Below are positions 3,791-31,215 of a stretch of 32,283 nucleotides of DNA, in pieces. This stretch comes from Trichosphaerium sp. ATCC 40318. Lineage: Eukaryota > Protista > Tubulinea. The number at the start of each line of letters is the position of its first letter. Within the stretch, counting starts at the first letter, position 1. A program made the translations under genes and the position numbers. The notes under the pieces were generated by a model. It ran no database searches. It was not told the DNA's origin and worked only from the letters and a program-made list of their open reading frames with translations. The stretch lies in the NCBI GenBank assembly GCA_038496445.1, contig JALMLS010000380.1, positions 1-32,283 of the forward strand, given 5' to 3'.

Positions 3791-3893
3791 AGTATAAGTA
3801 TTTTATATCAAGTAAAGTATCAAATTTTTGAAACTTTTTAATTAAATTATTTAAATTTTTTAATTACTTTAGTGTTAAGCTTATATAGTTTTA

Positions 3894-9308: not shown

Positions 9309-9406
9309 GTAATAGCATATTCATTCTTTATTGTTTTGTTTTTTATAATAGTTTTTTAGTATCAAAAAAGCATATGTAAGAGGGGAATTTTTGAAAAAAA
9401 TAGTAA

Positions 9407-9524
9407 AAAAAAAAGAGAATGTTATTTGTATTATAAATGAATATCTAAAAAGGATAGTTATTTGTTTATAATTTTTTATAGTTTCAAGGGAAGAAGCGAA
9501 ATTAAAAATAAATTAAGTTCTTTA
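9407..9524 (+). repeat. Conserved ~120-nt dispersed element, copy 1 (upstream of nad5)
   Basis: agagaatgttatttgtattataaatgaatatctaaaaaggatagttatttgtttataattttttatagtttcaagggaagaagcgaaatt. Near-identical copies at 25119 and 32187. Confidence 0.95.
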
Positions 9525-9577
9525 AATTTTATATTTTTTGTTTTTTATAATTAAAAGTAAAAAGAAAGAAAGAAATT

Positions 9578-11450
9578 ATGATTTTAGTATAGTTTTTTTT
9601 CCTTTATGTAGTGTATTAATTTTAGTCTTTATGGTAAAAATTTGGGGAATCGTTTCGTATAAATATATCAATATTTTATTTATTTAATGGTTTATTATGT
9701 TCGTGCTATGCTTGTATGATGTTTTATTTTGTCGTTAATAATTTTTGGAAAGATTATTTTTTGCTAGAATCTATAGGTTGCCGGTTGGTTTTTTATTTGA
9801 TTTTTTAACTTTAAGTTTAATCTTGTTGTTTATGTGGTGTCATTTGTGTTCAAGTTATAGTATAGATTATATGTCGGAAGATGCTCATAAATTAAGTTCT
9901 TCTGTTATTTATCTTATTTACATTTTTTATGTTAATTTTAGTGAGCGGGATAATTTAGTACAAATGTTTTTAGTTGAGAAGGCGTGGGTTTAGCTTCTTT
10001 TTTATTAATAAATTTTTGTTTAAAAGATTAAGCGCAATAAAGCTGCGCTTAATCTATGATTGTTAATAGAGTTGGTGATGTTTTTATTTTGTTTGTATTG
10101 GTTTAATTTTTATATATTTAAAAACTATAGATTATAGTGTTATTTTTGGTTGTTGAATAGATTATAGGTCAAACTGTTTATTTTTTAGGCTTTGAATTTA
10201 TATTGCTGATATTATTTGTTTTTGTTTTCTTATAGAGTTATGGGCAAATCAGCGCAATTAGGTTGCATACATGATTACCAGAAGCATGGAAGGACCAACA
10301 CAGTATCCGCATTATTCATGCGGCAACAATGGTTACGGCAGGAGTTTTTTTATTAATAAGTTATCGTTTATTTTTGAATATTCAATTATATCTTATATTT
10401 AATTGTTTTTATTGGGGGTTTACAAGTTTAAGTGCAGCATATTTGCGTGTTTTCAGGTAGATATTAAGAAGTTGTTGCATATTCAACATGTAGTCATTTA
10501 GGTATTATGGTCGTTGCGTGTGATGTTCTTGTTTTCAAATCGGCTTTTTTCATCTAGTTATACATGCGCGGTTAAATCGTTATTATTTTTAGGTAGTGAG
10601 CACTAATTCATTCATTTAGTAATGAACAGGATATGCGTAATTTGCAAGGGTATCTAAATATACACGTTTTTATACATTTTGTTTTTATTAGGTTAAGTTC
10701 TTTAGCAGGATTACCTATGTTATCAGGTTTTGATCAAAGGATTTATTGTAGAATTGTTATTTTTGAATAGTTCTAGTTTGTTTTTATTTTTGTTATTTTA
10801 TTATCTTTAGTTTTACAATACTTTATTCTATGCGCTAGCTTTTTTTTTATTTTTAGATTTTCCTGTAGGTGTAAAAGCAAAGAAAGCTTAAAAATAAAAG
10901 AAAAGCCAACAAGTAAATCTTTTATTTTTAAGAGTTATTTTTCTAATTATCATTATTTAAATAACGTATGTTTTGAATTCTAATTTTTTAAGTCATATTA
11001 GTTTATTTATAGGTTATTTTTAATGGATTTATTTAATCTAATTGGGTATGAGGTCATTTATTTTAGATGATTATGATTATTTGTTAGAGTTTTATTTTTA
11101 GATATAAATTGAAAATATATATATTAACTACATTACTTTAGCAATATGAGTAGCACCCGCGTTTTATGGTTTAGATGTTCTTTTTTTAAATTTAATTTTC
11201 TTTATTTTTTTTGTTTAAAAGTTTTTATTTTGATTATATTTATGATATTTTTTTGTTAAATTTTTTTTTTGTTTTCTTATAAATATAGTTTTAATTTAAT
11301 GGAAAAAGTATATTAGAATGAATAGGTCCTTTTGGTATTTATAATGTTGGGTTCAAAATATAAATAAAAGAGAAATATTGTGGAAAGTGTGATATTTATA
11401 AATATTTGATTTTGTAGGTTTAGGGTTTTTTTTTTTACATTAATTATTAG
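9578..11450 (+). CDS. nad5: NADH dehydrogenase subunit 5 cryptogene
   Basis: After single-base insertions: GFLFD, [119 protein letters not shown]. Confidence 0.97.
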
Positions 11451-11690
11451 TTATAATTTATTTTTAATTTTAATTTTTATAATATTTTTTATAAGCATTT
11501 TAATGCTTTTTTATATTTATTTTAATAAAATAAATATAAAAATAATATCTTTAGTGTCTAAAATTAATTAAAAGAGCGTTCTCTTTTAGTTTAAATATAA
11601 ATAAAATAGAAAAATTTAATTTAAAATTAAAAAAAAAATATAAAATAAAAAAAAAGAAAGAATAAAAAAAGAAATGAAAAAAATAAAAAT

Positions 11691-13169
11691 ATGTTAAATT
11701 TTTTAGGAGTACCTTATGTAATAGGATTTCAGTCGAATAGTTCGGCTGTAGAGAAGCATTAGTGCATTTATATGATATGGTATGTGTATGTTGATGATTG
11801 TATTAGTATTTGTGTTAAATTTTTTATGGAAGGTGTAATATGTTTACAAGAAGAGAAAGAAAGTATTAGTAGAAGTGTGGTTTGTGTTGGTAGGTTTTTA
11901 TTGGGCATGCTAATAGACGTGTATTAGAAGTACTTTTACAGAAGCTTATTGAAAAAAAATAGTAAAAAAAATATATATAAAAATAAAAAATGTTTAAATA
12001 TAGAGGTAAATCTAAAATTTATTTATATAAAATGTTAGAAACAAATCAAGAATCTAATTTATTAAGACCTCGTTTGTGAAATAAATCATTTGTTATTTAT
12101 GAAGTTTATTTTTTTTATTTTTTAAACTTATTGCTTAGTTTGTTAGAACCTTTTTTACCTAAAGACAAAAAAGGTATATATAATGAGATTTTGGATAATT
12201 ATATAAATTTTAATTTTGAATTAGAATATAACTTAAGTGTAGAAATTAAAAATTTAATTTGAGATTTTTTTCACTTAGAAAGAGTATCTCGTTATGAACT
12301 ATGGTATCATCATTATACTTTTACAGGTGTTATATGAACATTTTTAGATTGAAATTATATGAGAATGCGAAAATGTTTTAAATTTTGTGAGTATAGTAAT
12401 TGGATAGACAACCTCAGAAAAGGCTAATATAATAAAAAGTTTAGGTGCTCGAAGTATGTTAAGCCTCAATTTACTAGAGATGTTTATTTTAATAAGATAA
12501 ACAAAGTGAACATATTTTGGATTAGAAAGTTTCCGGAACGAAATTTAATTTATATTTTTATGGAGTATCAGCTGTTCAAGATATTAGATGGAAACTTGAT
12601 GAACATTATCGCCAGTGCATTACTTTTTTTTTGATGATTTCCAACTTTATTAGTGTATATTCTCAAGGTGATTTTTTGCACCTATGTATTCATTTAATGT
12701 TGCAGGCAAGCAATGAGCTGGCTATATGAAATAGCAAATTTAATGTTAAAAATCAAAGTAAATTACAGGACATTTAAATATGTTGATACTATGGGTATTA
12801 TGAACCGGGTCTAGCGTTCGTTAAATTACAAATGGCGTGAAGGTAATTACTATTTTAGATACTACAGCGTTGGATTTAGGAGTAATTTAGTACAAGATAT
12901 AATTTACATCCAGGTCTTTTAAGATTATTAGAAACTAATCATTGATAGGATTAAAAATGAATATGAATTAAGAGTACTTATTTCTGGTATAGATGTTATA
13001 CATAGCTTTGGTATACAGGATTAGGTTGTAAAATGGATGCTGTACCAGGAAGGTACATGGAATAACAGTTTTTTTAAAAAGACCTGTATGTTTTATGGTC
13101 ATGTAGCGAATTATGTGGAGTAGAGCATGGTATATGCCTATAGCGGTTGAGTTGTTAAATTATCTTTAA
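11691..13169 (+). CDS. cox2: Cytochrome c oxidase subunit 2 cryptogene with large insertion
   Basis: PYVIGFQ at the N-terminus, METWWTLSP (~12588), [58 protein letters not shown] with CuA ligands intact. The stop may instead be at ~13219. Confidence 0.97.
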
Positions 13170-13212
13170 TAAAAGGAAGTAAATTTGGATACAATGAATT
13201 TAAAAAAATAAA

Positions 13213-14822
13213 ATGTTAAGTTTTTTATTTTTTAAATTAGGAAATTTAGGCAGAGAATTTTATTTAAATTGTCTAGCTATATATAGAACAGATTTTTGAT
13301 TAAATTTTTATTTAAATGAAAATGAGTTATATGAAGAAGGTTATGATACCAACGACCAAACGGTCGAAAAAACAGAAACGTGAAATAATTTTTTAGGCGG
13401 TGACTCAAACGTCTCTATACTTCTAGTAAATTTTGTTAGGTGAGGTACATCTGTAGGAAGAGTCTGAAAAAACTACAAATCTGAAATACAAATATTTAAT
13501 AAAGTGCTTATTTTAAGGAGAATGGCATGAAGTTTTTTAAGTGTAATCACTGGGTTAATAATAGTTGAATTTTTAAGTTGAATGGATTTATTGAATTACA
13601 GCAGTTATGTTGGTTTTAGTATTATATCAACCGAAATGTTTTGGTAACGAAAGAGTTTTTGTTTATATTGCACAAATGTTTATATCAGAAGCTTTTGTTG
13701 GCGAAGATGTATTTGTAGTCTAATAGGTATGTGTGAGATCTTATAAGGTATTTTTTTACTTTTTTACTTTGGTTGATAAATATTGGCATATATCATGCTT
13801 AAGTGTTATTATCTTCAAATATGTATTTAGCTGTTTATTTCAATATTTATTTCTTTATTTTATTATATTTTTATAAATACAATGTATTTATATACAAGTT
13901 GTATATTGTCCATTTCCATATTTTAGTGAGATTTTGAGTTGATTTATACAATAATAATAGAGTTATGAGGGAATTTAATGAATATTTATCATTGATAAAT
14001 ATTTAAATATAATTATATAGATATATTTATAACAGATATTTATTGTGAAGAGAATTAGTAGGTTAATAGATACATTGATTGATACTCTTTTTTTATATTT
14101 TTTATAGAACATCTTTTGCTGAGGTGATGTCCTTACAGTGATTAATTTTATTTTTGAAAGTTAGATTCAAAAATATATCAAATTTTTGAATCTAACTTTC
14201 AAAAATTTGATATAAGTTCTGTAAATTTTTTTTATTTGTTTTACGAGCATTATGAATCAAGCTTATACGTTTTTTCATTTTTTAACTTATATATTTTTTA
14301 GTTTTAAATTTAAAATAATAAATATCATATGTGATATTTATATTAATTTCTCTAGTAATTACTTCGATTTTGGTCTGGATGCTTTCTGCTATTGCCTTTT
14401 TGAAAAGGCAATAGCAGAAAGCATCCAGACCAAAATCGAAGTAATTACTAGAGAAATTAATATAAATATCACATATGATATTTATTATTTTAGTTGTTTA
14501 TTAATAAAAGTTTTTTTATAATGTTATTAGATTTTAATTGAAGGTTATGTTTTTAATATGGGTAACTTAATTTTTAGCCAATTTTAATAGATTTTATTTG
14601 TTTATTTTAAATTTAAATAATAAATTTTTACAGAATTAGATTTTTTTTCTTTTCATGTTTTTATTTATTTAGATTTTGATGTTTATAGTTTTGTTGACAT
14701 TTGTACAATATTTAACTTTTGATGAGGTGTTTTTACTCCAACATTAATTTTAGAACAGATCGTTGAGTAATGTTCAATTTTTTAATTTTGAGAGTTTTCT
14801 TTTTTTGCTTTTTCTTTTATAA
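13213..14822 (+). CDS. tatC: Sec-independent translocase TatC (mttB) cryptogene with N-terminal extension and insertion
   Basis: LRRMAWSFLS, SEAFV (~13686), LLWLINIGIYH ('W.F..PGLY'), IELWGNLNEYL, GVFTPTLILEQI...E ('TPPD..SQ......E'), plus multiple hydrophobic segments. Confidence 0.55.
14320..14483. repeat. Palindrome ~164 bp (a second, shorter one lies at ~14151-14206)
   Basis: ...gatgctttctgctattgcctttt tg aaaaggcaatagcagaaagcatc... Confidence 0.93.
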
Positions 14823-17565
14823 ATGATTGTATTTTTTTCTATTTAGTGGGTTGATAATTTATGTTTCACAATAGTTTGAATATTATCAATTTTGTGGTTG
14901 ATTCTATTCAAATGTGTATAGTTTACCGTATTTTTGGCTATATAAGTATCTAGTTATTTTAAGCTCAGTTCTATTCTTGTATTTTTTTTTGATGGTGAAT
15001 ATTAAATTATACTATAGTAACATATCAGGTAAAGAAAGAGAGTAATAGATGGGACTTATAGTGGAAGTATCCGGTTGCTTTAGATATTGTATTTAGTTGT
15101 GCGGGGATAAATTTTTTAAAGAAACATTTAAAGCTCGTAGGATTATGATTTTTCTTGTTTTTGAGAGAGTATGATCCAGAAATGGATTCGATGTGCGGGA
15201 TGATCTTGTGTCTAGTTATATACAGGTGAACAAATAGTTGAGATTTTGATGAAGAATTTATGATGACTTAGATGCTATAGAGAACGTGTTTTAATGTTAC
15301 TTATATACAAGAAAAATCAAATGTGCAGAAGGCAGCAGATATAATTTGGATAATAGTGAGATGTAGCATCAGGTTCAGTTTTCTTTTTGATGAAGTGCCT
15401 GATATTCATACGGGATAAAATCCTATTATGGTTTAAAAGTGACGCGGAACAAGATCCAGATGATGAATATGAGAAGATATAGTGGATTTGGAAATTTATT
15501 TTGAAGATATGGTAAGGAATATTTAGTTCAACGGAAGATAAAGATTTGAATCTCCGGAAAATAATTTATATGATTGAATAGGGACGAAGCTTTAGCTGGG
15601 TTGAAGCAGATATGGATGAATGTTCATTTATGAAAGAGTAGTATAAATATGTTAGAAAATTTGAATGTAGAAGGGTAAATGTAGAAATGCTTGAGGTATG
15701 AGAGATGGGTAGATTTTAGTTATTATGATATGATAGAGGAAGAAGTCCTGTAGAAAATATACCGCACTTATGAGTTGTATTATTTTTGGGCAGTGTATAC
15801 ATGTAATAGGTTTATTTTTGAAGATGATTTATTTTGGAATATTATAAAAAGCCTTTAAAGGGGCTCCAGAGGAATATCAGTGTTAATGGAAAGAAATTCA
15901 ATTTTTTGATCTTGGGTATTATTTTTCACGAGTGATTCAATCATAATGGAAACTAGATAGATTTGTTTGTACATGCAAGATATACATGGACGTAAATTAT
16001 ATTTAGAGAATTGAATAGATGGTATTCTTATCTAGTTAGTACGTGAAATCCAGATAGTTGCTTAAATATAGCTTACGTTTTATAGTTATGCTAAGCGTTG
16101 TGAAAAGGTAGATGAAGTGTATTATCAGGCAAATTAATAGATGGTGCAAGATGTGACACGTTATTGAAAGGGCGGTTTGTTTGATTTTGCTTTAACTAAG
16201 TTAAAGCAAAATCAAACCAAAAAGTTAAAAAATATATCGGGTTATTTATTTAATGATTGGATGTAAATTATCAAGAAAAATCAGATTGAGAAAGGATACT
16301 CCCGGTTAAGGTTGGAAAATAAAGAATTGTATTAAGTTCTGCAATATTAAAAAGTGCCAAGAAAAATGAGTTTAATTTATAATAAAAGTAATTTTATAAG
16401 AGAATGCAAAATAAAAAAATAGATAGTTTATAACAGCTAAAGATATATTAATTGGTATAATTTGAATGATTTTAGTGAATATGGTATATAGCAAAATGAG
16501 CTGATTTAGTAAACTAGAAGCTTAAGTTATTATGTAAAACTATAAAAAGATCCGGCATTAATTTAAGATGTATTTTGGATGGGAGTATTTTATTATAGTT
16601 TATTTAATATACGTTTTGGGAGTTATTGGGTATAAATTATGAATGGTGTATAGTGATAGAATACTAAAATAAAAATAAAAAAAAATAAAGAATATTTGAT
16701 AGATCCTTAATAAAAACACCAAATGTGAAGGGATAAGTTACAAGGTTAAAATTATCAGGATTTATCTTCTTATATAGACTTAAAAAAAAGAAAAAATATG
16801 TATAGAAATTATATTTTTAAATTAAATGGAGAAAGAAAAAAAGGGAATCCAAAAATATTGTTTTATAACTGACAGCAGGATTTAAATTTAAATCCTGCTG
16901 TCAGTTATAAAACAATATTTTTGGATTCCCTTTTTTTCTTTCTCCATTTTAATTCTTATGATATATTAAAATTATATAATTTAGGTAAATTTGATTCTAT
17001 TTATTTTTATTTAAAATCTAATAATTTTTTCTATAAAGATTTTTTAAATTTATATGATTTAGGTAATTCAAATTTGAATTTTTTTTTATTAGATTTTTAT
17101 TTTTATAAATTATTAAAATTATATAAATTAGATGTATATATTTTTACTCTTTGAAATAATACTAATATAAATTTTTACGATTATATATATATATATGATA
17201 TATTAAAATTATATAAATTAGATGTATATATTTTTACTCTTTGAAATAATAAAAATATATATAATTATATACATGACATATTAAAAAAATATAAATTAGA
17301 TAGTTATACTTTTGATGATATTTTAAATATATATAATTATATATATGACATGTTACAAATATATAAATTAGAAAATTATACGTTTAATGATATTTTAAAA
17401 GATTTAGAATATTCTTATGATTTATTAAATATATATAATTTGGATGAAAATAAAGCGAAATTTAAAAAGAAAGTACGGAAATTAAGCATTATTAAGTTTG
17501 TTAAAGAAAGACAGCTATTATTTATTTATTTGGTAATTTTTTTAAGAGGATTTAAAATCATTTAA
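14823..17565 (+). CDS. Large unknown cryptogene A (hydrophobic N-terminus, D/E-rich core, Tyr/Leu-repeat tail)
   Basis: ATG directly after the inferred tatC stop. An acidic reading such as DEVPDIHTGIKSYYGLKSDAEQDPDDEYEEDIVDLEIYFEDYGKEYLGSTEDKDFESPENNLYD is obtained only by adding a base every 20-40 nt. 16921-17565 is open without repair. It may be more than one gene. Confidence 0.5.
16824..16949. repeat. Perfect palindrome, 126 bp
   Basis: ...ataactgacagcaggatttaaa|tttaaatcctgctgtcagttat... Confidence 0.95.
16958..17445 (+). repeat. Degenerate in-frame coding repeats (Y-D-I/L-L-K/N-x-Y-x-L)
   Basis: Recurrent tatgatatattaaaattatataa-like units. Exact ~50-nt duplicate ttaaaattatataaattagatgtatatatttttactctttgaaataata at ~17114 and ~17204. 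Confidence 0.85.
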
Positions 17566-17613
17566 TTTATATAAGTTAATTTAATAAATGTAGATAATAG
17601 AGTTTTTATAAAA

Positions 17614-20600
17614 ATGAACATAATTATTATAGGATTGGTTTTTAAAAAATTGTTGGATTTAGGTTCTAATTTTAAGTTAAATGTTTTATGGTTATTTTAC
17701 CTAGTATTGTAGGTTCTTTGTTTGATTAGTTTTTTATTTTTATGATTTATAGAATATATAATATTGTTAAAATGGACTAAAAAGCCAATGCCAAAGTATT
17801 TATCTTTAATTCCTTTGTGGTTTTTAGAAGAACTTTATATGGAGTTGATTCGTTATATACCAAAAACGTCTTGCTAAATAAAAGGGAGCTTAGTAGATGA
17901 ATTTTTGGGAAAGTGAGTTTTTTGTAGGTTATAGTTGCTGGTAGAGGCAGAGCAGATTTGGTTAGAAAGAGCCTTGAAGAGTACCTAGATATATTCATGA
18001 TAAATTGGAGATTATGAATGCGTACAAAGAAAGAATAAAATTAGATAAGGTGCGGTACAGAATGCAGATAAATGGTTTGGATGCAAGAAATGAAGTAGCT
18101 ACGGATTATATTACTATGATAGAAAGTTATCCGGAGATGAATCCGAACAATTATATATAACGGTACCAAATTTTTATACGGGAAGCAAGGAAGTTGTTGC
18201 TGTGCCCATGCCAGCAATAAATTATGAAAAAGTACATGGTATAAGTTGAGAGGACTCAAAAAAACAAAAGAAAAAATTAACAAAATTAGGTAAATTAATG
18301 AATAGAATTAATTTTAAATTAAAAAGAGATAAAAAATTGAGAGATAAATATTTATTAAATTATATTAAAGCCAAAAGATACTATACAAAGGGAAGAAATT
18401 ATATATATAAACAAAAAGTATCCAACAGATCTTTTAGAAATTTTAAACTAGGTCCTGGTGCATTAGATAAATGATGTAAAGATGAAAATGTATATAAATA
18501 TTTAGAAATGTCTTTAATAAAAAGTGAGGAGTTTAAACAAGATATTATTGCTAAAGAAAGAGGTGAAGAGTTTGCAATTTCGCCACCAAAAAAAAGATAT
18601 GAAAAAGATTTAGAGAACGATGCTGAACCAGTTTCACGTAGTGAATTTTTTTTTAATTTTGGAAAAATGTATTGAAATCTTAATCATTTTGGTTGAAATT
18701 GAATACATTTAACACGTAGCGAATATCCTATGAGAAAATTAGCAATGCTGGGTGTAGGAGAAGGTTATAGGACATTAAAAGCATGTATACTCCGTATAAG
18801 AAAGGTTCACGTTTGTTGAATGAACAACTGATGAAAGCAATATGGTCTATACCAGAATATAAAATGGAAAAAAATTGGAATTTTACAGAAGCAAATATAC
18901 AGCGATGGAGTTAAATTAAAGATAAGAATAAATAGATGAATACATTGCGGTTTGTTGATCAATGGGTATGTGAAGAAATTATTGATATTTATTTCAAAAA
19001 AGACAAACTAATTTTTTTAGAAATAAGATTATGTCTAACGATAAAAAAAGATGACATAGATCTTTTTTTATTCTTTTTGGGTTACGTGGTTGTGGAAAAG
19101 AAGCTCGTTATAAAAAATCGGAACAATTAGGAGAGTTGGCTTATGTGTGAGATTATTGTTTTATTCCAGCAGATTGAAATCGTTATAGACAATATGGTGC
19201 AAAATGATGATTACTGTTCAAATATTATTATCCAGTAAGATACACATGAATAGATTATTATAGATCATTTATGAGAACAACCGATGATGCTAATGTGTTT
19301 GGTTTATATAGTTTAAGGTTATTGGGAGATTATAGTGTGGTATATTCTTATTATTATAGAAAACTTATGAATTTTCCATATCATCGTGTAGTATATGCTA
19401 GAGAAAATTTAAATTTAAATCGATTTTGAAAAGGAAAAAAAAAAAAAAATATAAAAATAAATAGATTAAGTTATTGATGAGAGTTTTATTTAAAAAAAGA
19501 ATCAAATTTAAATAAAAAAGAATTTAAAAATTTAAAAGAAGATCAAAAATATAAATTATATATAGAAAAAATAAAAAAAGAGACAAAATTGATTAGATCG
19601 ACAGATTTATTTTTAAAAGAAATACCTGATTTATTTAATTTTTTGGGTGATTCCATAGTAAAAATTAGAAATTCAAAAATAAATAATATAAATTATATAA
19701 AAGAAAAAGCAAGAAAATGAAGCGAGGTGACGTCACCTAAATTTTTTATTAAAGAAATAGAAGAAAAAAAAAACAAGGAGCAAATGAAAATATTAAAAAA
19801 ATATGAAAAAGAATGAATAAAAGAAAACAATATAGATATTTTAGATGAGACATATGAAGAAAAAAGGAAAGCTATAGCAAGAAAATTAGAAAAAAAAACG
19901 CAAAAAATTCTAACTAAAGATCTTTATATTTTATGAAAAATTTTAAATACATATAATAATAAAAAAAGAAAATTTAGAGATATAATGAATTTTAAAAAAG
20001 ATATTTATACTTTAAATAATTATGAGTTGCTAGTTTTGGATTATTTTGAATATAAAATTCAGAAATTGATGCTTAAAAAATTTTATTTATTAGGTTTAAG
20101 TTATAAGAAAGAAAGTAAAATAAAATTTGTAATGCATTATGGGAAAATGTTTGATTTATTTTTTCATTTAAGAAGAGATCAGCAAGAATTAGAAAGACGT
20201 TTATATAGAAGGGTTTTTAATATAGATTTAAGATATAGAGAAGGTATATCTGAAATTGAATATAAAATGTTTCCGGAAATTGATGAAAATAAAAAGTTAA
20301 GAAGCTCTAATAATCTAAGTAAAAAAAATGAGAAAAGTTTAGAAATTATTTGAAGAGATTTGGGCAAAAGATTAAAAAAAAAAAAAAATTTCAAAAAAAA
20401 AAATATTAATTGAACATTAAAAAGAAATAAGATAAATACCTTATTTGGTAATGATTTTTATATTAAAAAATGAAATAAAAAACGAGGTAATTTTTTTATT
20501 TGAGTCTTTAAAAAAACACCGTCTAAGTGGAGTTTTTTTAAAGATGTTATAGTAGAACCTATAAAAGAGTTATGAGATAATTTTTATGAAGATATGGTAA

Positions 20601-20899
20601 TAAAATTCAATGATTTTAAAGAAGATACTTATTATCCATGAAAAGAGGATTTTTATCATCAACTTACCATAGAAGCTGAAGCATTAAGAGAATTAAATGA
20701 AGAAAATTTAGGAGGTAAGAGTAATAACTTTATAACAAGGTTGCGAACAAGATGAGCTGCTTATTTTGATGAAGTATCTCAAAGAAAAGTTAAAATAGAA
20801 GAAAAGCCAGAGGCTGAGTTTGACGAGGTTTGAAGAAAAAAAAAAGAAATAGAGTGAGATAATTTATGGGAAAAAAAAAAACAAGAGCCTAAAGAATAA
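17614..20899 (+). CDS. Large unknown gene B (edited 5' part, unedited K/E/W-rich 3' part)
   Basis: ATG 17614 with a hydrophobic start and a frameshifted 5' portion. With TGA=Trp the frame is uninterrupted from ~19326 to TAA 20897-20899 (>520 codons). Another open block lies at ~18285-18780. Confidence 0.6.
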
Positions 20900-20984
20900 A
20901 TGTGCCAATAAAATAAAATAAATAGTTAACTTTTTATTTTATTTTATTGGCACATTTATTCTTTAGGCTCTTGTTTTTTTTTTT
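20871..20984. repeat. Long hairpin overlapping the stop codon of gene B (possible terminator/processing signal)
   Basis: caagagcctaaagaataaatgtgccaataaaataaaataaa ... tttattttattttattggcacatttattctttaggctcttg, followed by a T-run. Confidence 0.9.
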
Positions 20985-21012
20985 GTTTTTTTGGTATGTA
21001 AAAAACACTGTG

Positions 21013-21182
21013 TAGGGTGGGGAATTTTGTTTTTTTGGTATAAAAAAAAAACAAAATAGATAATTTATGAGAAGAAAAAAGCCTAAAGAATAAAATTCCC
21101 CACCCTAGGCGGAAAAAACTTAAATAAATAGTGGTATATTTTCTATTATTATACCACTATTTATTTAAGTTTTTTCCGCCTA
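21013..21182. repeat. Two adjacent inverted repeats upstream of nad2
   Basis: tagggtggggaatttt...aaaattccccacccta and taggcggaaaaaacttaaataaatagtggtata...tataccactatttatttaagttttttccgccta. Confidence 0.9.
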
Positions 21183-21256
21183 CGGCAAGTATCGCTATTC
21201 GAATAGTTATAATATATATAAGTAAAAAAAAGTATTAATATAGACTTATATATAAG

Positions 21257-22632
21257 ATGGCTAATCTATTTTATTTTTATTTAGAAGAGAGATTCTTATT
21301 TTATTTTTATTTGGTGATTAATTTTTGGTACTAGTTTACAAATTTGAGGAAAAAGTGCAGGATTCTTGCAAAAGATTTAGGATTATTATGTTTTGTTTTT
21401 CAATTTTAAGCTTTAGTTGTGCGCGTTAATGCAGTGATATGACTGGATCAAACTTATTTTGATGCTTCGGTTGTATCTATTTAAAAGTGTTATAGTGTGC
21501 TTCTTTTTTTTTTTGACTTCTATGAGGAAAGTGATTCCTACAATGGTGTTTACTTAATTTATGTATATGTTATGTAGTTTTTTAATATTATCGTTTTCGA
21601 GTTGTTGTGTTGTTGAGTTGTTTTAGAATTATTAGAATTTGTTTCTATATTTTATTAAGTGTAGGTCGAATAAAGTTTCTAAATCTGAGCAGCCCTAAAA
21701 TATTTAATTTTTAATAAATTAGCTCAGGATTTATTTTTATAGGTTGTGTTATTTTTTGACTTAAGAGTTCATGTGGTCGTATAAGTTTATAGAGTGGGTG
21801 TGGATTTTTATATTTGGATGGTTTATTATCGTAGGGTTATCTCTATTTTTATGTGTTTATTTATAAAATTAGGGATATTTCCGTTTAATTTTTGATTGTT
21901 GATAGCTATGAGGCAGGTTCTTTGGGGCTTTAAGTATTTTAACAGTAGTAAGTAAAATAGTGACCTTGATGTTTTTTTGAAAGTATTTTTTGTATTGATA
22001 CAAATTGAAGAAATAAGTCAATAATAACAGTATTTTCAGTTATTAGCATGTGGTTTTTGTATTTTTAGGTGTTAGTCAAATAAGATTAGAAGAATTTGAG
22101 CGTATAGCTCAGTGTAAATTTAAGTTATTTATTATTAGCATGTAATACTGCATCTCATTTAGTTTTTTATGTATTTTAATTTATTTGGTATTTATATGCT
22201 TGTAAGCATGGGTTTTTTTTTAATTTGTTTATTTTGTTAAGTCATTTACAAAATAGAGTATAGTAAATATGTTAGATTTTTTAAATTTAATCATATAGCG
22301 TTTCGTGAAGTATATTTTTTTGATTAAGTTTTTTATCTGTAGCAGGATTACCTCCGCTAATGGCTTTTTTTCTAAATTTTTGTTAATATCGAGTTTATTA
22401 GCGGTAGTGATTGATTACTTGCTATATTTTGCATTTTAGTCGTATTTTTGCATTAAGTTTTATTTAAACGTTTTCAAGGATTCCTGTTTGGTAAATTTTG
22501 AGGATGAGGCTTATATATAAGGCGAGACGAAATATTTATTATATGTTAGCTTTTTTTTTATGGCTAATATTTTATTTATTTTAATTATGATGTTTTATTT
22601 TTATTGATATAGATATGTTAATTTAATTTAAA
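21257..22632 (+). CDS. nad2: NADH dehydrogenase subunit 2 cryptogene
   Basis: LEL...FYILL, SEAALKYLI, KLGIFPFNFW..D.YE, IRRIWAYSSV.N, SVAGLPPLMGFFSK after single-base repairs. Confidence 0.93.
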
Positions 22633-22635
22633 TTA

Positions 22636-24056
22636 ATGACAAATTGACTTTTAATTTTGGGTAATAGGGATTGCGTGTTATTTTTTTAGTATATATAAAT
22701 GTTATATTAGTTGGCTTTTTTTATTTTATTTTTTTGTGATACTGAGTTATTTTATATTTTTAGTTACATAGGTAATTTTTTTAGGAGGAACAGAGGATTG
22801 GATGTGACGTTTGTCTTATCTTTTCATATTTTAAGCAGCAGTTTGTTTATATAGGTAAGCTCCTTAATTGGGATCGCAAGTATAGAATAATAGTTTTATT
22901 TTTATGCTTTTAGCATAACTTGTTGTGCGCAGGTGCTTTTTTAGTATATGATCTTATTTTTTTTTATATTATTTTTGAGTTTTTTTAATACCTCTTTTTT
23001 TTTTTATAGGTATTTGAGGTACTAAAAAGCGACGGTAATAGCATCCTTTAAATTATTTTTATATACGTATTAGGATCTTTTTCTATGCTTATAGGTTAAT
23101 GTCTTTATATTCTCAAGTGGTACATTTGATCTGTATACCTTATTTTATATAATAATAGTTTTCAGCGAGATTAGGTACATGTATTTTATTTTTAACAGCA
23201 TTTGCTGTTAAACACCCATGTATCCATTTCATTTATGTTACCCGAAGCACATGTAGAGGCAACAACAGTAGGTTCGGTTATTTTAGCAGCTTGATTTTAA
23301 AATTAGCTTGTATGGGCTGTGTAGATTTGTTATTCTTTGTTTTTTGAATCTATAAAATATATGCGCCTTTATTTTTTGTAATTATAATAATTGTATTTTA
23401 CATAGTGTATGTTTATCGTGTAGACATGTGATGTTAAAAAAGCATAGCTTATATGTCTATAGCACATATGATTTTAGTTTGATTGGTTTGTTTTCGTTAA
23501 ATATAGTAGGTGTGCAAGATGCATTTATTTATTAGTAGGACATGGTTAGTATCGAGTGGTTATTTATTTTAGTAGGTATTTTATATGATAGTTTAAAACT
23601 CGTGTTATTTTTTATTATGGAGTATAAGTCAAATAATGCCATTATGGCATTATTTTATTTTATGTTTATTTTTGCTAATTTTGGTTTTCCTGTTTTTTAA
23701 ATTTTGTGGAGAACTTTTAATTTTTTTTTCTTGTCTTTATATAGTTTTTTATTAAGTTTTTTTTTATGTTTAGGTATGTTATATCTACAGGGGCTAGTGT
23801 ATGAATGTATAATAGGATAGTTTTTGGGAAGTTAAATACGAAGGCATATTAAAAAAGGTTTGAAAAGAAGTCAAAGAGAAAAAAATTGAAGATTAATGGG
23901 AGTAGTAGAGGTTGGTTGATTAGTACGTATGGTCGTACAGATTTAACTTGGCGTGAATTAATATTTTATGCTTTTTATTATGTACCGTGTAATATTAGGA
24001 ATATTACCATGGTTTGGGAATTCAGCGTTGGTCATTTTATACTACTAACAGAATAA
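22636..24056 (+). CDS. nad4: NADH dehydrogenase subunit 4 cryptogene
   Basis: DLIFFYIIFE..LIP...IGIWG, [87 protein letters not shown], LGILP. Confidence 0.97.
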
Positions 24057-24071
24057 ATAAGCTTACTTATC

Positions 24072-25094
24072 ATGGAAAATTCTAAAATTGTTGATGAAAT
24101 AATGGAAAAAATGGCACGTTTTTTTTTTGTTTTTTTTAATTGCCTAAAAAGCAAAAAAAGCAAAGGGGCCTACGTGTCTATACCAGGATTGATATTAGAA
24201 CCTCAAAATTTAGAGGAGGTTATACATAATAGGTTCATTTTATTAGGAGTAACAAGTGTATTATTTATAGTTTGTTTAGGTTTTGCTGCAGGTTTTTATT
24301 ATAATAGTAATAATCATATAATCTCTGTAGATATGGACTGTATTGATCAGGTGCTTCGCTATAATTTAGGGTATAAAAATTTAAAAAACGATGTGAATCT
24401 TGAGAATTGTGAAGCATATTTTGAACCGCAAAATATATTAATATTACCAGCTTTTGAATTTGAAGATCCAGATTTAGATTTAGACGAAAAAATAATTGAG
24501 GGAATTTTAGAATTGCAGCAACAAATACCAAAAGTAGAGGTAGAGTTAGACGTTGCAAGTGAAACAGTAAAAATAATGGAGCAAGCTTTAGAGTCTTACA
24601 ATTGAGGTAATTATAGAGAAAATATAGTAAATATCGAAGATGAACCTACTTATCAAGGGACAGAAAATTTTCAAGGATATAATAATCCAAATTTAGATGA
24701 GTTATTGTCAGATGCAATAGCTTCATCTAAATTTAATGTATCTGATGAACTAGATGATAGTTCATCAGATACATTAAATTTAGATGAAGCTATTGCATCT
24801 GATGGTTCAAATGAAATTTTTGAGAATATTGTGACTTTTGAGGAAGAAGATTATGGAGGAAAAGATACTTTAGAAGGAATTGACATAGTGTTTCCCGGAG
24901 AAAATCAACTGGTAAGGGAAATTGGTGAAAATATTGATGGAAATTTATATTGTAGTTATGAAGAAAATATGGTAGGTTGTTATGATTGTTTAAATGAAAC
25001 TACTCAGATTTTTTTAGATATGGATAATGATTTTTTTTTATTTGTTGAAATATTAAAAAAAGTTATATATTTTTTAATATCTATTTTTTTTTAA
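24072..25094 (+). CDS. Unknown acidic membrane protein, 340 aa, needs no editing
   Basis: Track ORFs 24072..24605 and 24705..25094 are in the same frame and join through TGA=Trp. One TM segment (FILLGVTSVLFIVCLGFAAGFYY), a very D/E-rich body and a hydrophobic C-terminus. Confidence 0.8.
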
Positions 25095-25118
25095 TATTTT
25101 ATTTTATATTTTTTATTT

Positions 25119-25235
25119 AAAAAAAGAGAATGTTATTTGTATTATAAATGAATATTTAAAAAAGATAGTTATTTGTTTATAATTTTTTATAGTTTCAAGG
25201 GAAGAAGCGAAATTAAAAATAAATTAAGTTCTTTA
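25119..25235 (+). repeat. Conserved ~120-nt dispersed element, copy 2
   Basis: Same as 9407-9524 except atatttaaaaaagatag in place of atatctaaaaaggatag. Confidence 0.95.
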
Positions 25236-25269
25236 TTTTATTTTTTTTTGTTTTTTAGATAGCTTTTAT

Positions 25270-25810
25270 TTTTTTTTTTATATTTAAGTGTTTTTAGGTT
25301 TAGCATTGTAGGTTGGTTAAAAGAAGATTTTAATAATATAGTTTACATTTTAAAAAAAGAGTAAGACCTATTGTTTTTATTCTTTGTGATTAGGTTACGA
25401 CGGTTTACGTGTTATAATGAAGCATATAATTTTAATAGGGCATCTTTAGTGTGTCAAACAGATATTGTGTAGGTATGACTACATGGATGGTTATGTAGGT
25501 GGATGTATTTGGATAAATGGTATAGCTAAGTGGTAATAATTATAGTTTTAATTGTAATGCTGAAGTGATGGTTTTACTGAGTTGCTATAACAAAAGGTTT
25601 CTTTATGTTTTGAAAAAAAGAAATTTAGTTTTGAATTACTAACTAGTGATATTTTTTTAGAGAATTGTTGCGTTACCAAAAAATTAATTTTTTGGTAACG
25701 CAACAATTCTCTAAAAAAATACAGAGTAATCATCTAGATATTAAAGTTTTTTAAAAGGTTATTTATGTGTTGGAGGATAACGAACAAAAAAAGATTTAAG
25801 GGAATGATTT
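25270..25810 (+). CDS. rpl6: Probable ribosomal protein L6 cryptogene
   Basis: DGY....IWINGI (L6 'GF...L.L.GVG'), INFLVTQQFSKKIQS...KVF.KG (L6 'DKQ.V.QFAA.I......YKGKG'). Start not located. Confidence 0.35.
25650..25721. repeat. Perfect palindrome, ~72 bp, inside putative rpl6
   Basis: agagaattgttgcgttaccaaaaaatt|aattttttggtaacgcaacaattctct. Confidence 0.93.
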
Positions 25811-25939
25811 TAAAACTAACATATTTAAATATCGCTTATTTTTAGGTTGTTTAAACAACCTAAAAATAAGCGATATTTAAATATGTTAGTTTTAAAATCA
25901 TTCCCTTAAATCTTTTTTTGTTCGTTATCCTCCAACACA
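25766..25939. repeat. Perfect palindrome, 174 bp
   Basis: tgtgttggaggataacgaac...ttaggttgttt|aaacaacctaa...gttcgttatcctccaacaca. Confidence 0.95.
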
Positions 25940-26770: not shown

Positions 26771-27198
26771 AAACAAAGACGTAAACTTTATATCCCGCTT
26801 TATTAAATTTTTATCGATAGGTAAGCGGGATATAAAGTTTACGTCTTTGTTTAGTTAACTAAAAGAGAGACGTAAACTTTATATCCCGCTTACCTATCGA
26901 TAAAAATTTAATAGTAATTAAGTCATTAATTTTGGGTCTCTTTAATTTTACTAGTAAGAAAAAACCTGGATATTTCTTACTAAGGTTATCTAATATTATT
27001 TCTTCGCTGGTATACTTAATTTTAAATTAATTTAAAATTAAGTATACCAGCGAAGAAATAATATTAGATAACCTTAGTAAGAAATATCCAGGTTTTTTCT
27101 TACTAGTAAAATTAAAGAGACCCAAAGGTTATTTGTGAAAAAAAACAACCTTTGGGTCTCTTTAATTTTACTAGTAAGAAAAAACCTGGATATTTCTT
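26771..27198. repeat. Cluster of nested/serial inverted repeats including a 196-bp perfect palindrome (26931-27126)
   Basis: agacgtaaactttatatcccgctt appears forward, inverted, then forward again (26777-26891). tttgggtctctttaattttactagtaagaaaaaacctggatatttctt appears forward (26931), inverted (to 27126) and forward (~27150). Confidence 0.93.
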
Positions 27199-30100
27199 TA
27201 AAAAATCGCGATAGGATCTTTTTTAAAGAAACAAATAAAAGTGAAGGTATAAATACATATCTAAAAGAAACAAATAAAAGTGAAGGTATAAATACATGTT
27301 TAAAAGAAAGAAAAGAAGTTAGTTTTAATATTGATTTAGTAGGTAAAATTAAAAGTAAAATTAAAGAAAGTAATTTAAAATTATATTTTTTACGTGATAT
27401 TTTATTAAGTCAAAGTTTTCTTTCTTTTTTAGATAGTCAATACACGTTGGACGTACGTCCAACGTGTATTGACTATCTAAAAAAGAAAGAAAACTTTGAC
27501 TTAATAAAATATCACGTAAAAAATATAATTTTAAAACCTTCATTGTTTTTTCATAAACGTTACATTAGAAAAAGGTTTTTATTAAAAAAAATAAAAAGAA
27601 TAGTAAAAAAACCAAGTAAAATATATAAAAAATACTTACGACGTCAGTATTTTTTATATTTTAGAAAGGAAAGAAAAAAAAAAACAAAAAAAAGGAAAGA
27701 AAAAATAAAAAAGATAAAAAAAGAACATTATAAAAAAAAATACATTAAATTTAAATTTTTTCAGAAGCTTCTGAAAAAATTTAAATTTAATGTAAAATAT
27801 AAAATAAAAATTTTTAATTCTAAAATAAAAATTTTAAAAACCAAAAAAAGTCAAGGTAATAAAATAAAAAGAATATTAAAAAAAAAGAAAAAAAAAAAAA
27901 AGGTATTAAAATTTTTAGTAGGTAGATATACAAAAGGTTATTTTAGAAAAAAAAGAGCATGAGATCGCAGGCAAGAAAGAATAAAACAAAAAAAAATTGA
28001 AAAAAAAGAAGAGATTAAAAAAAAAAGAAAAAAATTTTTTAAAAAACTTAGGAAAAAAAAAAAAGCAATAAAAAAAGAGATTAAAAAAATAATAAAGCAA
28101 AAAAAAAGATATAAAAAAGAGATTAAGAAAATAAAAAGAAAATATAAGTTAAATAAACTTATGATATTAATATTAAAAAATAAAATGATTAAAATGATTA
28201 AAAATTTTAATCATAAGTTTTTTAAATTTTTAGTTATTAGAAAAAAAAGAAGAATCAAATTTAATATAAAATCTCTTCTTTTTTTTTATTATGTTAAATT
28301 GAAAAATAAAAGAAAAAACGTAGAACAAACTAAGTATAAAAATTTAATGAGATTTTTATACTTAAAAAAAAAAAAAGAAAAAAAAAAAAAATTAGAAAGC
28401 TTAAGAAATTTAATTTATAAAAAAAGAGGGAAAAAAGTAAAAGAAGAAAAAAAAAATATATATAGAAAAATTTATAAAAATTATTATAATAGTTTTTATA
28501 AAGGATGAATTTTAAAAGCAAACAAAAAAAGAATGAAACGGAAAAAAAAGAATGAAAAAGAAAAAAAAAGTGTTAGTTTAAAAAAAAATTTAGAAAAAGA
28601 ATGGTTTTGATATGGGATACGTAAAATACTAAAAAAAAAAAAGCAAAAAAAAAAAAAGAATGAGGATATATTTTAGGTACAAAATGGCGTAAAAGATTAA
28701 AATTAAAAAAAAAAGAAAAAAAAAAATCAAAAAATAGAAATAGAAGATTACAAGCATGAGTTTTAATAAAAAAAAAGTGAGGTAAAATAAAGTATAAAAT
28801 AATAGATAATAAAAAAAAATATATTAGATTTTTAAAGAAAAAACGATTGTTAAAAAAAAAACGTTTATTAAAAATAAAGAAAAATAAGGTATTAAATAAG
28901 AATGTATATAAAAAAAGAAAAAAAAAGTGGAGAAAGTATAAATATATTAGTAGAAAGAAGCGTTTTGCTATGTTGGAAAAGGTTAATAAAAAAATAAATA
29001 AATTTTGAAAGCAAAATTTATTTAAAAACAAAGCAACTAAATCTTGTCAAATAAAATTAAATACGTTTAAATCAAAAGGTTTATGGAATCGTAAAACGTT
29101 TCGCTAGACGCTTTTCCTAAATTTTAGGAAAAGCGTCTAGCGAAACGTTTTACGATTCCATAAACCTTTTGATTTAAACACAAGGTTATCTTTTAAAAAT
29201 TTTATTTTGAGAAATCGACTTTATTATAATAAAGTCGATTTCTCAAAACGTAAAAAAGCTGGGGGATTTTGTTAAATAGTCAAAGCTTTACGCATACGTT
29301 TGACAATACGTTGCATAAAAGATCGTGCTGCATTAGAAATGCAGCACGATCTTTTATGCAACGTATTGTCAAACGTATGCGTAAAAAAACTGGTTATTTA
29401 AATTACGAAATAACTTAGCATACCTTTGAAAAGGAAATTTTGTAAAATTTAAAAAATTTATATCAAAAAGACGGTGACAAAATAAAAAATTTTATAAAAA
29501 ATGATTATTTGGTAGCAAAAATCAATGTGTAAATTTTAAAAAAAATAGAAATGTAAGATGATTTCTACCTAATAGTTAAAATTAAAATCATTTGGAAAAA
29601 ATTGATTGTTTTTTAATGAAAAAAAAAAATGAAAAGAATTTTATAGAAAATTAAGATATATTTATGGTGAGGATCGTAAAGATAGATTATTTTGAGTATG
29701 GCGTCATTGAATAATATTTAAAAATAAAGGTAGAGCCAAACTATTGCAGTTAATACGTCGTAAATATAAACATAGTATAGATATTTATGGTTTATGAAGA
29801 CTTATAAAAAAAATAAAATTAAATGCTTTTAGAGAAAAAGAAGGTAAACGTAAGGAAATAAGATTTATTAAACAATGGTTCAAATGAAAAATAAAAAGAC
29901 CAAAAAAGTTACAACAAATAATCTAGGTTTTAATAATATGATGAATATATTAATACGTTCTACTCTTTTAGCGAGGGACAGCTTATATTATAATAAATTA
30001 ATTTGAAGTTTAGATAAAAGTGGAAAACTATCGAGAAAAATTAAATATAATCTTTGATTAAAATATAACAAAGGAAAAAAATGAAACGAAAAGAAGATAA

Positions 30101-31020: not shown

Positions 31021-31215
31021 TGATTAAGCCGAGCAATTGTCTTCATGATTTTAAAACCTGGTTTTTTACATGTAAAAAACCAGGTTTTAAAATCATGAAG
31101 ACAATTGCTCGGCTTAATCAGCTTTTGCTATAAATAGAAATAGATTATGAATAAAAAGCTAGTAAATAATCTATTTCTATTTATAGCAAAAGCTGATTAA
31201 GCCGAGCAATTGTCT
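31012..31215. repeat. Double fold-back: palindrome 31012-31129 whose right arm is re-inverted at ~31160-31215
   Basis: agcaaaagctgattaagccgagcaattgtctt occurs forward, inverted and forward. Confidence 0.93.

What the first reader, a model, noticed from the sequence alone, without database searches (positions are those of the whole stretch)
9578..24056. Pervasive 'duplicate-the-neighbour' insertional RNA editing using several different nucleotides
Seen in sequence: nad5, cox2, nad2 and nad4 keep their invariant motifs but lack single bases. By hand I count 27 sites in ~900 nt of nad4 (22930-23830), about 1 per 33 nt. I needed no deletions and met no residual nonsense codons. The missing base is not one fixed nucleotide. 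G is required at nad5 9973 (tta g[g]t tga gaa, LGWE) and 10235 (ata g[g]a, IG.MGKSAQ), cox2 13086 (cct g[g]t, RPG) and nad4 23692 (FPG). C is required at nad5 10301 (aca c[c]a, GPTPVS), cox2 13016 (ata c[c]a) and nad4 23335. A is required at nad4 23471 (atg a[a]t, AHMN). A or G is required at cox2 13101 (ca[a], GQCSE). U or C is required at cox2 13054 (agg t[t]a, PGRL). One rule fits every site examined: the inserted base repeats an adjacent base. I found no site needing a non-duplicating insertion. Established knowledge: myxomycete (Physarum) mitochondria insert mostly C co-transcriptionally at similar density, kinetoplastids insert/delete U with guide RNAs, and paramyxovirus polymerases stutter G at a single site. 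Inference: here the mitochondrial RNA polymerase or an editing factor reads one template base twice at hundreds of specified sites. I know of no described system with this rule, but I cannot check the literature.
Basis: partly seen in the sequence, partly recalled or inferred. Interest (0 to 1): 0.97.

Follow-up and report, generated by a model that had tools for sequence, protein, structure and literature searches.

The report
Neighbour-doubling RNA editing in amoeba mitochondria
This marine protist's mitochondrial genes lack one DNA letter about every 30, and the RNA copies put each back as a repeat of the letter beside it; this rare kind of RNA editing was published once before, in the amoeba BB2, so this is a new and much denser example, not a new kind.

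Summary
Independent DNA contigs match the window without a gap. RNA-derived contigs carry only single-letter insertions, about one per 30 nt: 31 in 9914-10910, 27 in 12389-13188 and 19 in 15042-15577. All 12 insertions the tool listed (10 G, 1 T, 1 C) repeat the next DNA base. Applying them opens a stop-free 118-codon frame.

An MMETSP transcript protein, P0002, threads exactly onto cox2 DNA with 8 insertions, all solvable by duplication. Environmental relatives keep cox2 and nad5 without any indel. All 15 cox2 substitutions fall on third positions of the edited frame.

- The rule is already published for the heterolobosean amoeba BB2 (Yang et al. 2017, PMC5421314).
- The transcript shows Gln, not Pro, at 13016, so the inserted base is G or A and not C. 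It shows Val, not Leu, at 13054, so G is inserted and not U or C. Editing is therefore mostly G.

The host is not BB2. It is marine, editing is about four times denser, and it is probably the amoebozoan Trichosphaerium sp. (inferred). Verdict: a new member of a known kind. The scan had already reached this reading on other contigs of this genome.

The parts
9600..11600 (+). nad5 cryptogene, densely edited; boundaries approximate
   Evidence: PF00662 matches the piece 9742-9990. PF00361 matches 10375-10803 read through 9 stops. RNA contig X6 over 9914-10910 has 31 insertions, and X19 over 9947-10186 has 7, while DNA run X3 over 9930-10327 has 0 gaps. The motifs GWEGVGL and GKSAQ..[17 protein letters not shown] are restored by duplications. 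Relative L013 is 84% identical over 9796-10743 with no indel.
11987..12424 (+). Unedited open reading frame upstream of cox2 (146 codons in code 4)
   Evidence: It is stop-free in code 4. RNA contigs over 12017-12164, 12253-12403 and 12228-12401 lie on it with 0 gaps. Substitutions against relative L016 fall 30/13/5 on codon positions 3/1/2 of the fixed frame.
12389..13203 (+). cox2 cryptogene, about 27 editing sites
   Evidence: This is the only PF00116 match in the 70-Mb genome. X9 RNA contig has 27 insertions and X19 has 7 over 12879-13120, while X3 DNA has 0 gaps. P0002 threads exactly from 12957 to 13194 with 8 insertions, at about 12965, 13018, 13053, 13086, 13101, 13130, 13151 and 13188. 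The next codon is TGA (Trp), followed by Ile and TAA. L016 is 90.9% identical with zero indels.
13204..13644 (+). Unedited, fast-evolving ORF downstream of cox2
   Evidence: It is stop-free in code 4. X19 RNA contig over 13285-13435 has 0 gaps. Against L016, indels inside the ORF are 6, 3 and 6 nt only, and substitutions show no codon-position bias.
14823..16750 (+). Edited gene of unknown identity encoding an acidic protein; extent approximate
   Evidence: X9 contig over 15042-15577 has 19 insertions, and X6 and X19 contigs in 14823-15507 also carry insertions. The 12 listed insertions between 15066 and 15355 give one stop-free 118-codon frame over 15042-15385. DNA run X3 covers 15066, 15102, 15299, 15327 and 15355 without the extra base.
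16750..20896 (+). Block of long ORFs that are unbroken in the DNA: 16750-17562, 18049-19008 and 18932-20896 (655 codons). No known family
   Evidence: Code-4 ORF list. No Pfam family for the pieces tested. The minimum-insertion path needs almost none across 18078-20577.
20900..22600 (+).
   Evidence: At least 11-14 frame corrections are needed per 500 nt. The ORF pieces tested have no Pfam match.
22600..24056 (+). nad4 cryptogene; boundaries approximate
   Evidence: Repairing 23189-23335 by duplication only takes 4 insertions (at about 23218, 23237, 23289 and 23306). The result matches residues 220-268 of solved Nad4 chains at E=6e-18. The DNA-frame piece 23159-23344 matches nothing in Pfam. 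The lower bound for 22930-23830 is 14 insertions.

Best explanation
The window is mitochondrial DNA of a marine protist, probably the amoebozoan Trichosphaerium sp. Its conserved genes (nad5, cox2, nad4 and at least one unidentified gene) are cryptogenes: the DNA lacks one nucleotide about every 30.

Shown: every missing nucleotide is present in the RNA as a single inserted base that is identical to an adjacent encoded base. It is G in about five of six cases, and less often U, C or A. There are no deletions and no substitutions. This is the same editing rule described for the heterolobosean amoeba BB2.

[quoted passage not shown] How sites are specified is unknown.

Edited genes are interleaved with lineage-specific ORFs that are read straight from the DNA.
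For: - DNA and RNA differ only by +1 insertions: 31, 27, 19, 7 and 7 per contig. An independent DNA run is colinear with the window.
- All 12 listed insertions repeat the next base, and 9 of the 12 sit at a single, non-repeated base. Together they open a 118-codon frame.
- MMETSP transcript protein P0002 equals the window DNA plus 8 insertions with no substitution, and all 8 are solvable by duplication.
- Three environmental contigs from relatives (L013, L016, L015) keep nad5 or cox2 with no indel at 84-91% identity.
- All 15 substitutions in the P0002 region are third positions of the edited frame, against 8/5/2 in any fixed frame.
- The 70-Mb genome has no intact COX2 or Proton_antipo_M gene elsewhere.
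- Neither of two edited stretches exists as DNA on either strand.
- There is one T7-like RNA polymerase gene, on contig C209.
- The same rule, G bias and stutter model are published for BB2 (PMC5421314).
Against: - Only 12 of about 94 insertion rows were displayed, so the identity of the other 82 was not seen.
- All runs were Logan contigs, which cannot show editing efficiency, partially edited molecules or timing.
- X6 and X9 are RNA only by inference. X19 and the MMETSP transcript are declared RNA.
- No motif or signal that specifies the sites was found.
- Co-transcriptional re-reading rests on analogy with BB2 and Physarum.
- The organism's identity rests on a match of genome size, habitat and assembly method to a paper, not on a labelled sequence.
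Confidence: 0.85

Rival explanations
1. Physarum-style non-templated addition. The polymerase or an accessory factor adds a chosen nucleotide, mostly G, at marked sites without re-reading the template. The identity with a neighbour would then be a by-product.
For: The density is like Physarum's, and so is the mosaic of edited classical genes and unedited ORFs. The host is probably an amoebozoan like Physarum (inferred). Most sites are not homopolymers, so classical slippage does not fit.
Against: All 12 listed insertions match a neighbour, including the one T and the one C. I estimate the chance of that at about 4e-6. All 8 protein-threaded sites are solvable by duplication. No dinucleotide insertions appeared, because net length gain equals the gap count in every contig.
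Confidence: 0.1
2. Post-transcriptional insertion directed by guide RNAs, as in kinetoplastids, but using any nucleotide.
For: Nothing positive. Small RNAs were not examined.
Against: Two edited stretches of 41 and 47 nt have no match on either strand anywhere in the 70-Mb assembly at up to 3 mismatches. There are no deletions and the editing is not U-specific. BB2's authors likewise found no guides and almost no unedited RNA.
Confidence: 0.03
3. Assembly or sequencing artefact: long-read homopolymer under-calling removed bases from intact genes.
For: The assembly is probably Canu on Nanopore and PacBio reads. Contig C305 carries noisy mtDNA copies with scattered indels. A missing repeat of a neighbouring base is what homopolymer errors look like.
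Against: An independent DNA run reproduces the window with 0 gaps over nearly 4 kb. Runs X1 and X2 hold 95% and 89% of its 31-mers. Three metagenome contigs from relatives show the same frameshifts. Nine of 12 sites are single bases, not runs.
Confidence: 0.01
4. The RNA is colinear with the DNA, and the ribosome repairs the frame by programmed frameshifting or bypassing; or the genes are dead copies.
For: None beyond the broken frames themselves.
Against: RNA contigs and an MMETSP ORF contain the extra bases. Relatives show purifying selection in the edited frame, with 15 of 15 substitutions at third positions. No other cox2 exists in the genome.
Confidence: 0.01

Closest known systems
Mitochondrial insertional editing of the heterolobosean amoeba BB2 (ATCC PRA-19), Yang et al. 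2017, PMC5421314
   Same: Single-nucleotide insertions only. The inserted base is always identical to an adjacent encoded base. G dominates (84% in BB2, 10 of 12 here), with minor A, C and U. Most sites are not in homopolymer tracts. No guide-like sequences were found. A phage-type mitochondrial RNA polymerase is present. No motif specifying the sites is known.
   Different: Density here is about 1 per 30 nt, against 475 sites in roughly 70 kb of unique sequence in BB2 (about 1 per 120-150 nt). This mtDNA is 77% A+T, BB2's 70%. BB2 grows at 42 C in an axenic peptone-yeast-serum medium, while this organism turns up in marine metagenomes and in MMETSP. It is probably an amoebozoan, which would mean an independent origin. 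In BB2, 43 of 44 protein genes are edited, including all four unknown ORFs. Here long lineage-specific ORFs are unedited.
Myxomycete (Physarum, Didymium) co-transcriptional insertional editing
   Same: Similar density, about 4% of mRNA residues. Classical genes are cryptogenes while many unidentified ORFs are read directly. All four nucleotides can be inserted. The enzyme context is a T7-like polymerase. The host is probably also in Amoebozoa.
   Different: Physarum inserts mostly C, also adds dinucleotides and has some C-to-U changes, and only some inserted bases match a neighbour. Here G dominates, only single bases are added, and every one seen matches a neighbour.
Polymerase stuttering in paramyxovirus P genes
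   Same: A pseudo-templated extra G is added next to encoded G during RNA synthesis.
   Different: The viral case is one site per genome on a slippery A(n)G(n) tract and gives a variable number of Gs. Here there are hundreds of sites, mostly at single bases, each with exactly one insertion.
Kinetoplastid U insertion/deletion editing
   Same: It repairs frameshifted mitochondrial cryptogenes at high density.
   Different: It is U-only, includes deletions, is post-transcriptional and is directed by guide RNAs. None of these fits here.

Membership tests
BB2-type duplicate-neighbour insertional RNA editing | RNA carries single-nucleotide insertions relative to colinear mitochondrial DNA | tested here: met
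   RNA contigs carry 31, 27, 19, 7 and 7 insertions, and DNA run X3 has 0 gaps over the same places. P0002 equals the DNA plus 8 insertions.
BB2-type duplicate-neighbour insertional RNA editing | Every inserted nucleotide is identical to an adjacent encoded nucleotide | tested here: met
   All 12 listed insertions equal the next base. All 8 protein-threaded sites have a duplication solution. The other 82 rows were not displayed.
BB2-type duplicate-neighbour insertional RNA editing | G strongly predominates, with minor A, C and U | tested here: met
   The listed insertions are 10 G, 1 T and 1 C. A G duplication is possible at 7 of 8 cox2 sites, and A is implied at 13101.
BB2-type duplicate-neighbour insertional RNA editing | No deletions, dinucleotide insertions or substitutions | tested here: met
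   In every contig the length gain equals the number of gaps. X9 contigs show 0 other letters over about 1.5 kb.
BB2-type duplicate-neighbour insertional RNA editing | rRNAs and many tRNAs are edited as well | tested here: inconclusive
   ARAGORN finds no tRNA, and Rfam finds no rRNA or tRNA in the window even at E<=1. Either none lies here or they are too broken to recognise.
BB2-type duplicate-neighbour insertional RNA editing | Very high efficiency and accuracy, with almost no unedited RNA | not testable with these tools
   Only assembled contigs were available, and these drop minority variants.
BB2-type duplicate-neighbour insertional RNA editing | Host belongs to the BB2 lineage (Pharyngomonada, Heterolobosea) | tested here: inconclusive
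   It is not BB2 itself, since density, base composition and habitat differ.
Myxomycete insertional editing | Inserted nucleotide is mostly C, dinucleotides occur, and insertions need not match a neighbour | tested here: not met
   Only 1 of the 12 listed insertions is C, no dinucleotide insertions appear, and all 12 match a neighbour.
Kinetoplastid U-indel editing | U-specific insertions and deletions templated by guide RNAs | tested here: not met
   Insertions are mostly G and there are no deletions. Nothing in the genome matches the two edited stretches tested on either strand.
Homopolymer slippage (paramyxovirus type) | Editing occurs on a slippery homopolymer tract | tested here: not met
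   Nine of the 12 sites duplicate a single base. The run lengths of the other three are 2, 3 and 4.

The most novel reading that the evidence does not exclude
The host is an amoebozoan (Trichosphaerium or close kin), so duplicate-neighbour editing arose independently of BB2 in a different eukaryotic supergroup, at Physarum-like density. Myxomycete and BB2-type editing would then be two outcomes of one latent property of phage-type mitochondrial RNA polymerases. At least three related taxa sit in public metagenomes with conserved sites, so the unknown site-specifying signal could be found by comparison.
Probability: 0.5. Interest if true: 0.75.

Novelty: new member of a known kind. Interest (0 to 1): 0.6.

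Why it matters
How insertional editing sites are specified has been an open question since Physarum editing was found, and BB2 gave no motif. This is a second, culturable host, and it is about four times denser than BB2. It also has natural controls: unedited ORFs next to edited genes, and relatives whose sites are conserved through 9-16% sequence divergence. That makes comparative and in vitro tests of polymerase re-reading practical.

There is a practical side too. The mitochondrial genes of this genome cannot be annotated from DNA. They are invisible to standard tools (0 tRNAs, 0 Rfam hits, almost no Pfam hits), and barcode genes such as cox1 would mislead.

Tried and rejected
- Pfam scans of 30 DNA-frame ORF pieces gave only two weak nad5 hits, so the genes cannot be mapped that way.
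- A search of 1.84 billion representative proteins with the best nad5 piece returned one 40-aa DNA-derived fragment. It gave no reference proteins, but it led to relative L013.
- The look-up of encoding contigs found nothing for the ORF downstream of nad4 or for P0002, so no RNA contig could be fetched.
- A 72-aa hand-repaired nad4 peptide found no candidate in the protein collection. This is uninformative: the length filter, an absent transcript or errors in my repair could each explain it.
- An exact or optionally edited cox2 pattern was absent from the JGI metagenomes.
- The Rfam SSU search of the whole genome, meant to check the organism, failed twice.
- No supplementary files of the BB2 paper are held, so no primers were available to compare.
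- GG runs are not depleted in the cryptogenes, so the idea that every GG is made by editing is rejected.
- A is the preceding base at 10 of the 12 listed sites, but this did not hold at the cox2 sites.
- L014 from the degenerate pattern search is an unrelated cox2 with one missing A, not a relative.
Full report
WHAT THE WINDOW IS

The window is contig C339 of a 70.3-Mb, 642-contig eukaryotic assembly. The same mitochondrial sequence recurs on contigs C309, C305 and C214. It is 23% G+C with a strong excess of G over C along its whole length. ARAGORN finds no tRNA. Rfam finds nothing at gathering score, and at E<=1 it finds only A+T-rich hairpins. Open frames on the + strand are short wherever conserved genes lie, but several very long ORFs are open in genetic code 4.

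CHECKING THE OBSERVATION WITH READS

One 6-kb stretch (9578-15577) was searched for in public runs and then laid against four of them.

- Run X1 holds 95% of the stretch's 31-mers and X2 holds 89%. Candidate RNA runs hold 5-22%, which is what a change every 30 nt or so would leave.
- DNA run X3, from a different study and organism label, lies on 9930-10327, 10591-10992, 12166-13088, 13068-13676 and other places with 0 gaps.
- RNA-type contigs differ from the DNA only by insertions. X6 has 31 over 9914-10910. X9, from the same sample as X1, has 27 over 12389-13188 and 19 over 15042-15577. X19, which is declared RNA-seq, has 7 over 9947-10186 and 7 over 12879-13120.
- In every contig the length gain equals the number of gaps, so there are no deletions. 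The X9 contigs have no substituted letters.

The tool displayed 12 of about 94 insertion rows, at 15066-15355: ten G, one T and one C. DNA run X3 covers five of these places without the extra base. Each of the 12 inserted letters equals the following DNA base. Nine of them duplicate a base that stands alone. With the local base composition, I estimate the chance of 12 neighbour matches out of 12 at about 4e-6. Inserting these 12 letters turns 15042-15385 into a single stop-free frame of 118 codons, while the other two frames are full of stops.

AN INDEPENDENT TRANSCRIPT

I repaired the cox2 copper-site region by eye and searched the protein collection with the 51-residue result. The top hit, P0002, is an 82-residue ORF from an MMETSP transcriptome, 96% identical to my repair. 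P0002 threads onto the window DNA from 12957 to 13194 with exactly eight single-base insertions and no substitution. Every one of the eight has a solution in which the inserted base repeats a neighbour. The ORF ends at a TGA, followed by Ile and TAA. That fits TGA coding for Trp, which a standard-code ORF caller reads as a stop.

The inserted base is therefore G or A, not C.
The inserted base is G, not U or C.

COMPARATIVE EVIDENCE

A search of representative proteins with the best nad5 DNA-frame piece gave one hit, a 40-residue fragment from a JGI metagenome contig, L013. L013 is 84% identical to 9796-10743 and aligns without a single indel across a stretch where the RNA carries roughly 27 insertions.

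A degenerate DNA pattern for a GQCSE motif lacking the base in its Gln codon found two more relatives.
- L016 is 90.9% identical over cox2 (12389-13203) with zero indels. Its only indels lie downstream of cox2: a single base at 13209 just after the cox2 stop, 6, 3 and 6 nt inside the downstream ORF, and 15 nt beyond it.
- L015 is 84.7% identical over 12847-13210, with no indel in the coding part.

In the P0002 region the window and L016 differ at 15 DNA positions. All 15 are third codon positions of the edited frame. In any fixed DNA frame they split 8/5/2. My script also flagged one extra first-position difference and one amino-acid difference. Both come from how it copied a neighbour into L016 at site 2, not from the DNA.

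So the frame really does shift at these sites. The shifts are shared by related taxa, and selection acts on the edited reading. The nad5 site at 10301 reads ACA-C[C]A in the window and ACA-C[C]G in L013.

OTHER CONTROLS

- The only COX2-family match and the only Proton_antipo_M match in the 70-Mb genome are the broken mitochondrial ones.
- Two edited stretches of 41 and 47 nt do not occur anywhere in the assembly on either strand, even with three mismatches. So there is no DNA copy of the edited form and no long antisense guide.
- The genome has one phage-type RNA polymerase gene, on contig C209.
- Contig C305 carries noisy mtDNA copies. The window itself is confirmed by independent DNA.

EXTENT OF EDITING

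The minimum number of duplicating insertions needed just to avoid stop codons recovers only a third to just over half of the number seen in RNA in the long covered stretches: 15 against 31, 15 against 27, and 6 against 19. It is close to zero across 18078-20577.

A duplication-only repair of 23189-23335, using four insertions, matches residues 220-268 of solved Nad4 chains at E=6e-18. The unrepaired frame matches nothing.

A MOSAIC OF EDITED AND UNEDITED SEQUENCE

RNA contigs lie with 0 gaps on 12017-12403 and on 13285-13435. Both stretches sit inside ORFs that are open in the DNA. The upstream ORF shows ordinary codon-position bias against L016, 30/13/5 on positions 3/1/2. The downstream ORF shows none, and its indels are all multiples of three. 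The longest ORFs, up to 655 codons, match no Pfam family. The run lengths of G are not depleted in the cryptogenes. Only about one G run in five or six is duplicated, so something beyond the presence of a G must specify the sites. I found no such signal.

WHAT IS ALREADY KNOWN

Yang et al. 2017 (PMC5421314) describe 475 mononucleotide insertions in mitochondrial RNAs of amoeba BB2. [quoted passage not shown] They propose polymerase stutter.

The present organism is not BB2.
- BB2 mtDNA is 70.1% A+T, with about one site per 120-150 nt.
- BB2 grows at 42 C in an axenic peptone-yeast-serum medium.
- This mtDNA is 77% A+T, has one site per 30 nt, and occurs in marine metagenomes and in MMETSP.

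Among papers in the library that cite or resemble the BB2 study, I found no second organism with this rule.

The assembly's size and contig count are close to the published Trichosphaerium sp. draft of 70,866,254 bp in 710 scaffolds. That genome was assembled with Canu from Nanopore and PacBio reads and polished with Pilon. The organism is a marine amoeba rich in giant-virus genes. The paper does not mention mitochondria or editing, and the library holds no paper on its mtDNA. This identification is an inference. I could not compare a labelled sequence, and the SSU search failed.

MECHANISM

Shown: single-base insertions are present in the RNA, they match a neighbour, they restore conserved proteins, and the sites are conserved in relatives.

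Inferred: the phage-type polymerase reads one template base twice at marked positions during transcription. All four nucleotides obey the neighbour rule, which argues for templated re-reading and against base-specific addition. Most sites are single bases, which argues against ordinary homopolymer slippage.

Timing, efficiency and site recognition are untested.

EARLIER FINDINGS OF THE SCAN

Four earlier follow-ups on other contigs of this genome reached the same reading. I found the BB2 paper and ran my own tests independently of them, and my results agree.

VERDICT

The phenomenon is real and striking, but its kind is already described. It is a new member of that kind: denser than BB2, and probably in a different supergroup.

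Noticed in passing
window 16750-17562, 18049-19008, 18932-20896, 24057-25091, 27081-28673, 30390-31130: Very long ORFs (up to 655 codons) are open in code 4 directly in the DNA. They are lysine-rich and match no Pfam family. They lie between densely edited genes, so edited and unedited coding sequence form a mosaic, as in Physarum.
   Followed up: partly
window 2346-2427, 14364-14439, 16824-16950, 20875-21182, 24709-24801, 25649-25889, 26808-26906, 29086-29362, 31010-31131: About a dozen A+T-rich hairpins of 60-120 nt score as microRNA-like in a permissive Rfam scan on both strands. They could be processing signals or mobile palindromes. No true Rfam family is implied.
   Followed up: no
window 9360-9551 and 25095-25259: A repeated element gives a nearly identical translation in both copies (RECYLYYKWI.KKDSYLFIIFYSFKGRSEIKNKLSSL). 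Both copies lie at the edges of gene clusters.
   Followed up: no
window 9893-9906 against L013: The Arg-Phe-Phe stretch of nad5 seems to need its insertion at AG^T in the window, but about 9 nt further on in relative L013 (CGT TTT TTT G^T), with no change in DNA length. An editing site may have slid between species. The relative's RNA was not seen.
   Followed up: partly
window 9884-9913 (loose end of an X19 contig at 9914): A metatranscriptome contig continues upstream of 9914 with a different sequence that encodes HLPRFMSYLS, a canonical Nad5 stretch. It is probably an edited nad5 from a related organism, or a chimeric contig.
   Followed up: no
G000 contig C305 (loci L007, L008): The assembly holds several redundant mtDNA copies. 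Those on C305 carry scattered single-base indels and a garbled stretch, which looks like unpolished long-read sequence and not real variants.
   Followed up: partly
L014 (Ga0137414_1257063) 3831-3867, minus strand: An unrelated A+T-rich mitochondrial cox2 is intact except for one missing A in the Gln codon of GQCSE, the same place as editing site 13101. It is either an assembly error or an isolated editing or frameshift site in another organism.
   Followed up: partly
window 13017-13020: The transcript-derived Cox2 has Gln where nearly all Cox2 proteins have Pro (HSFGIQGLG). Relatives L016 and L015 keep Gln through a synonymous CAG/CAA change.
   Followed up: yes
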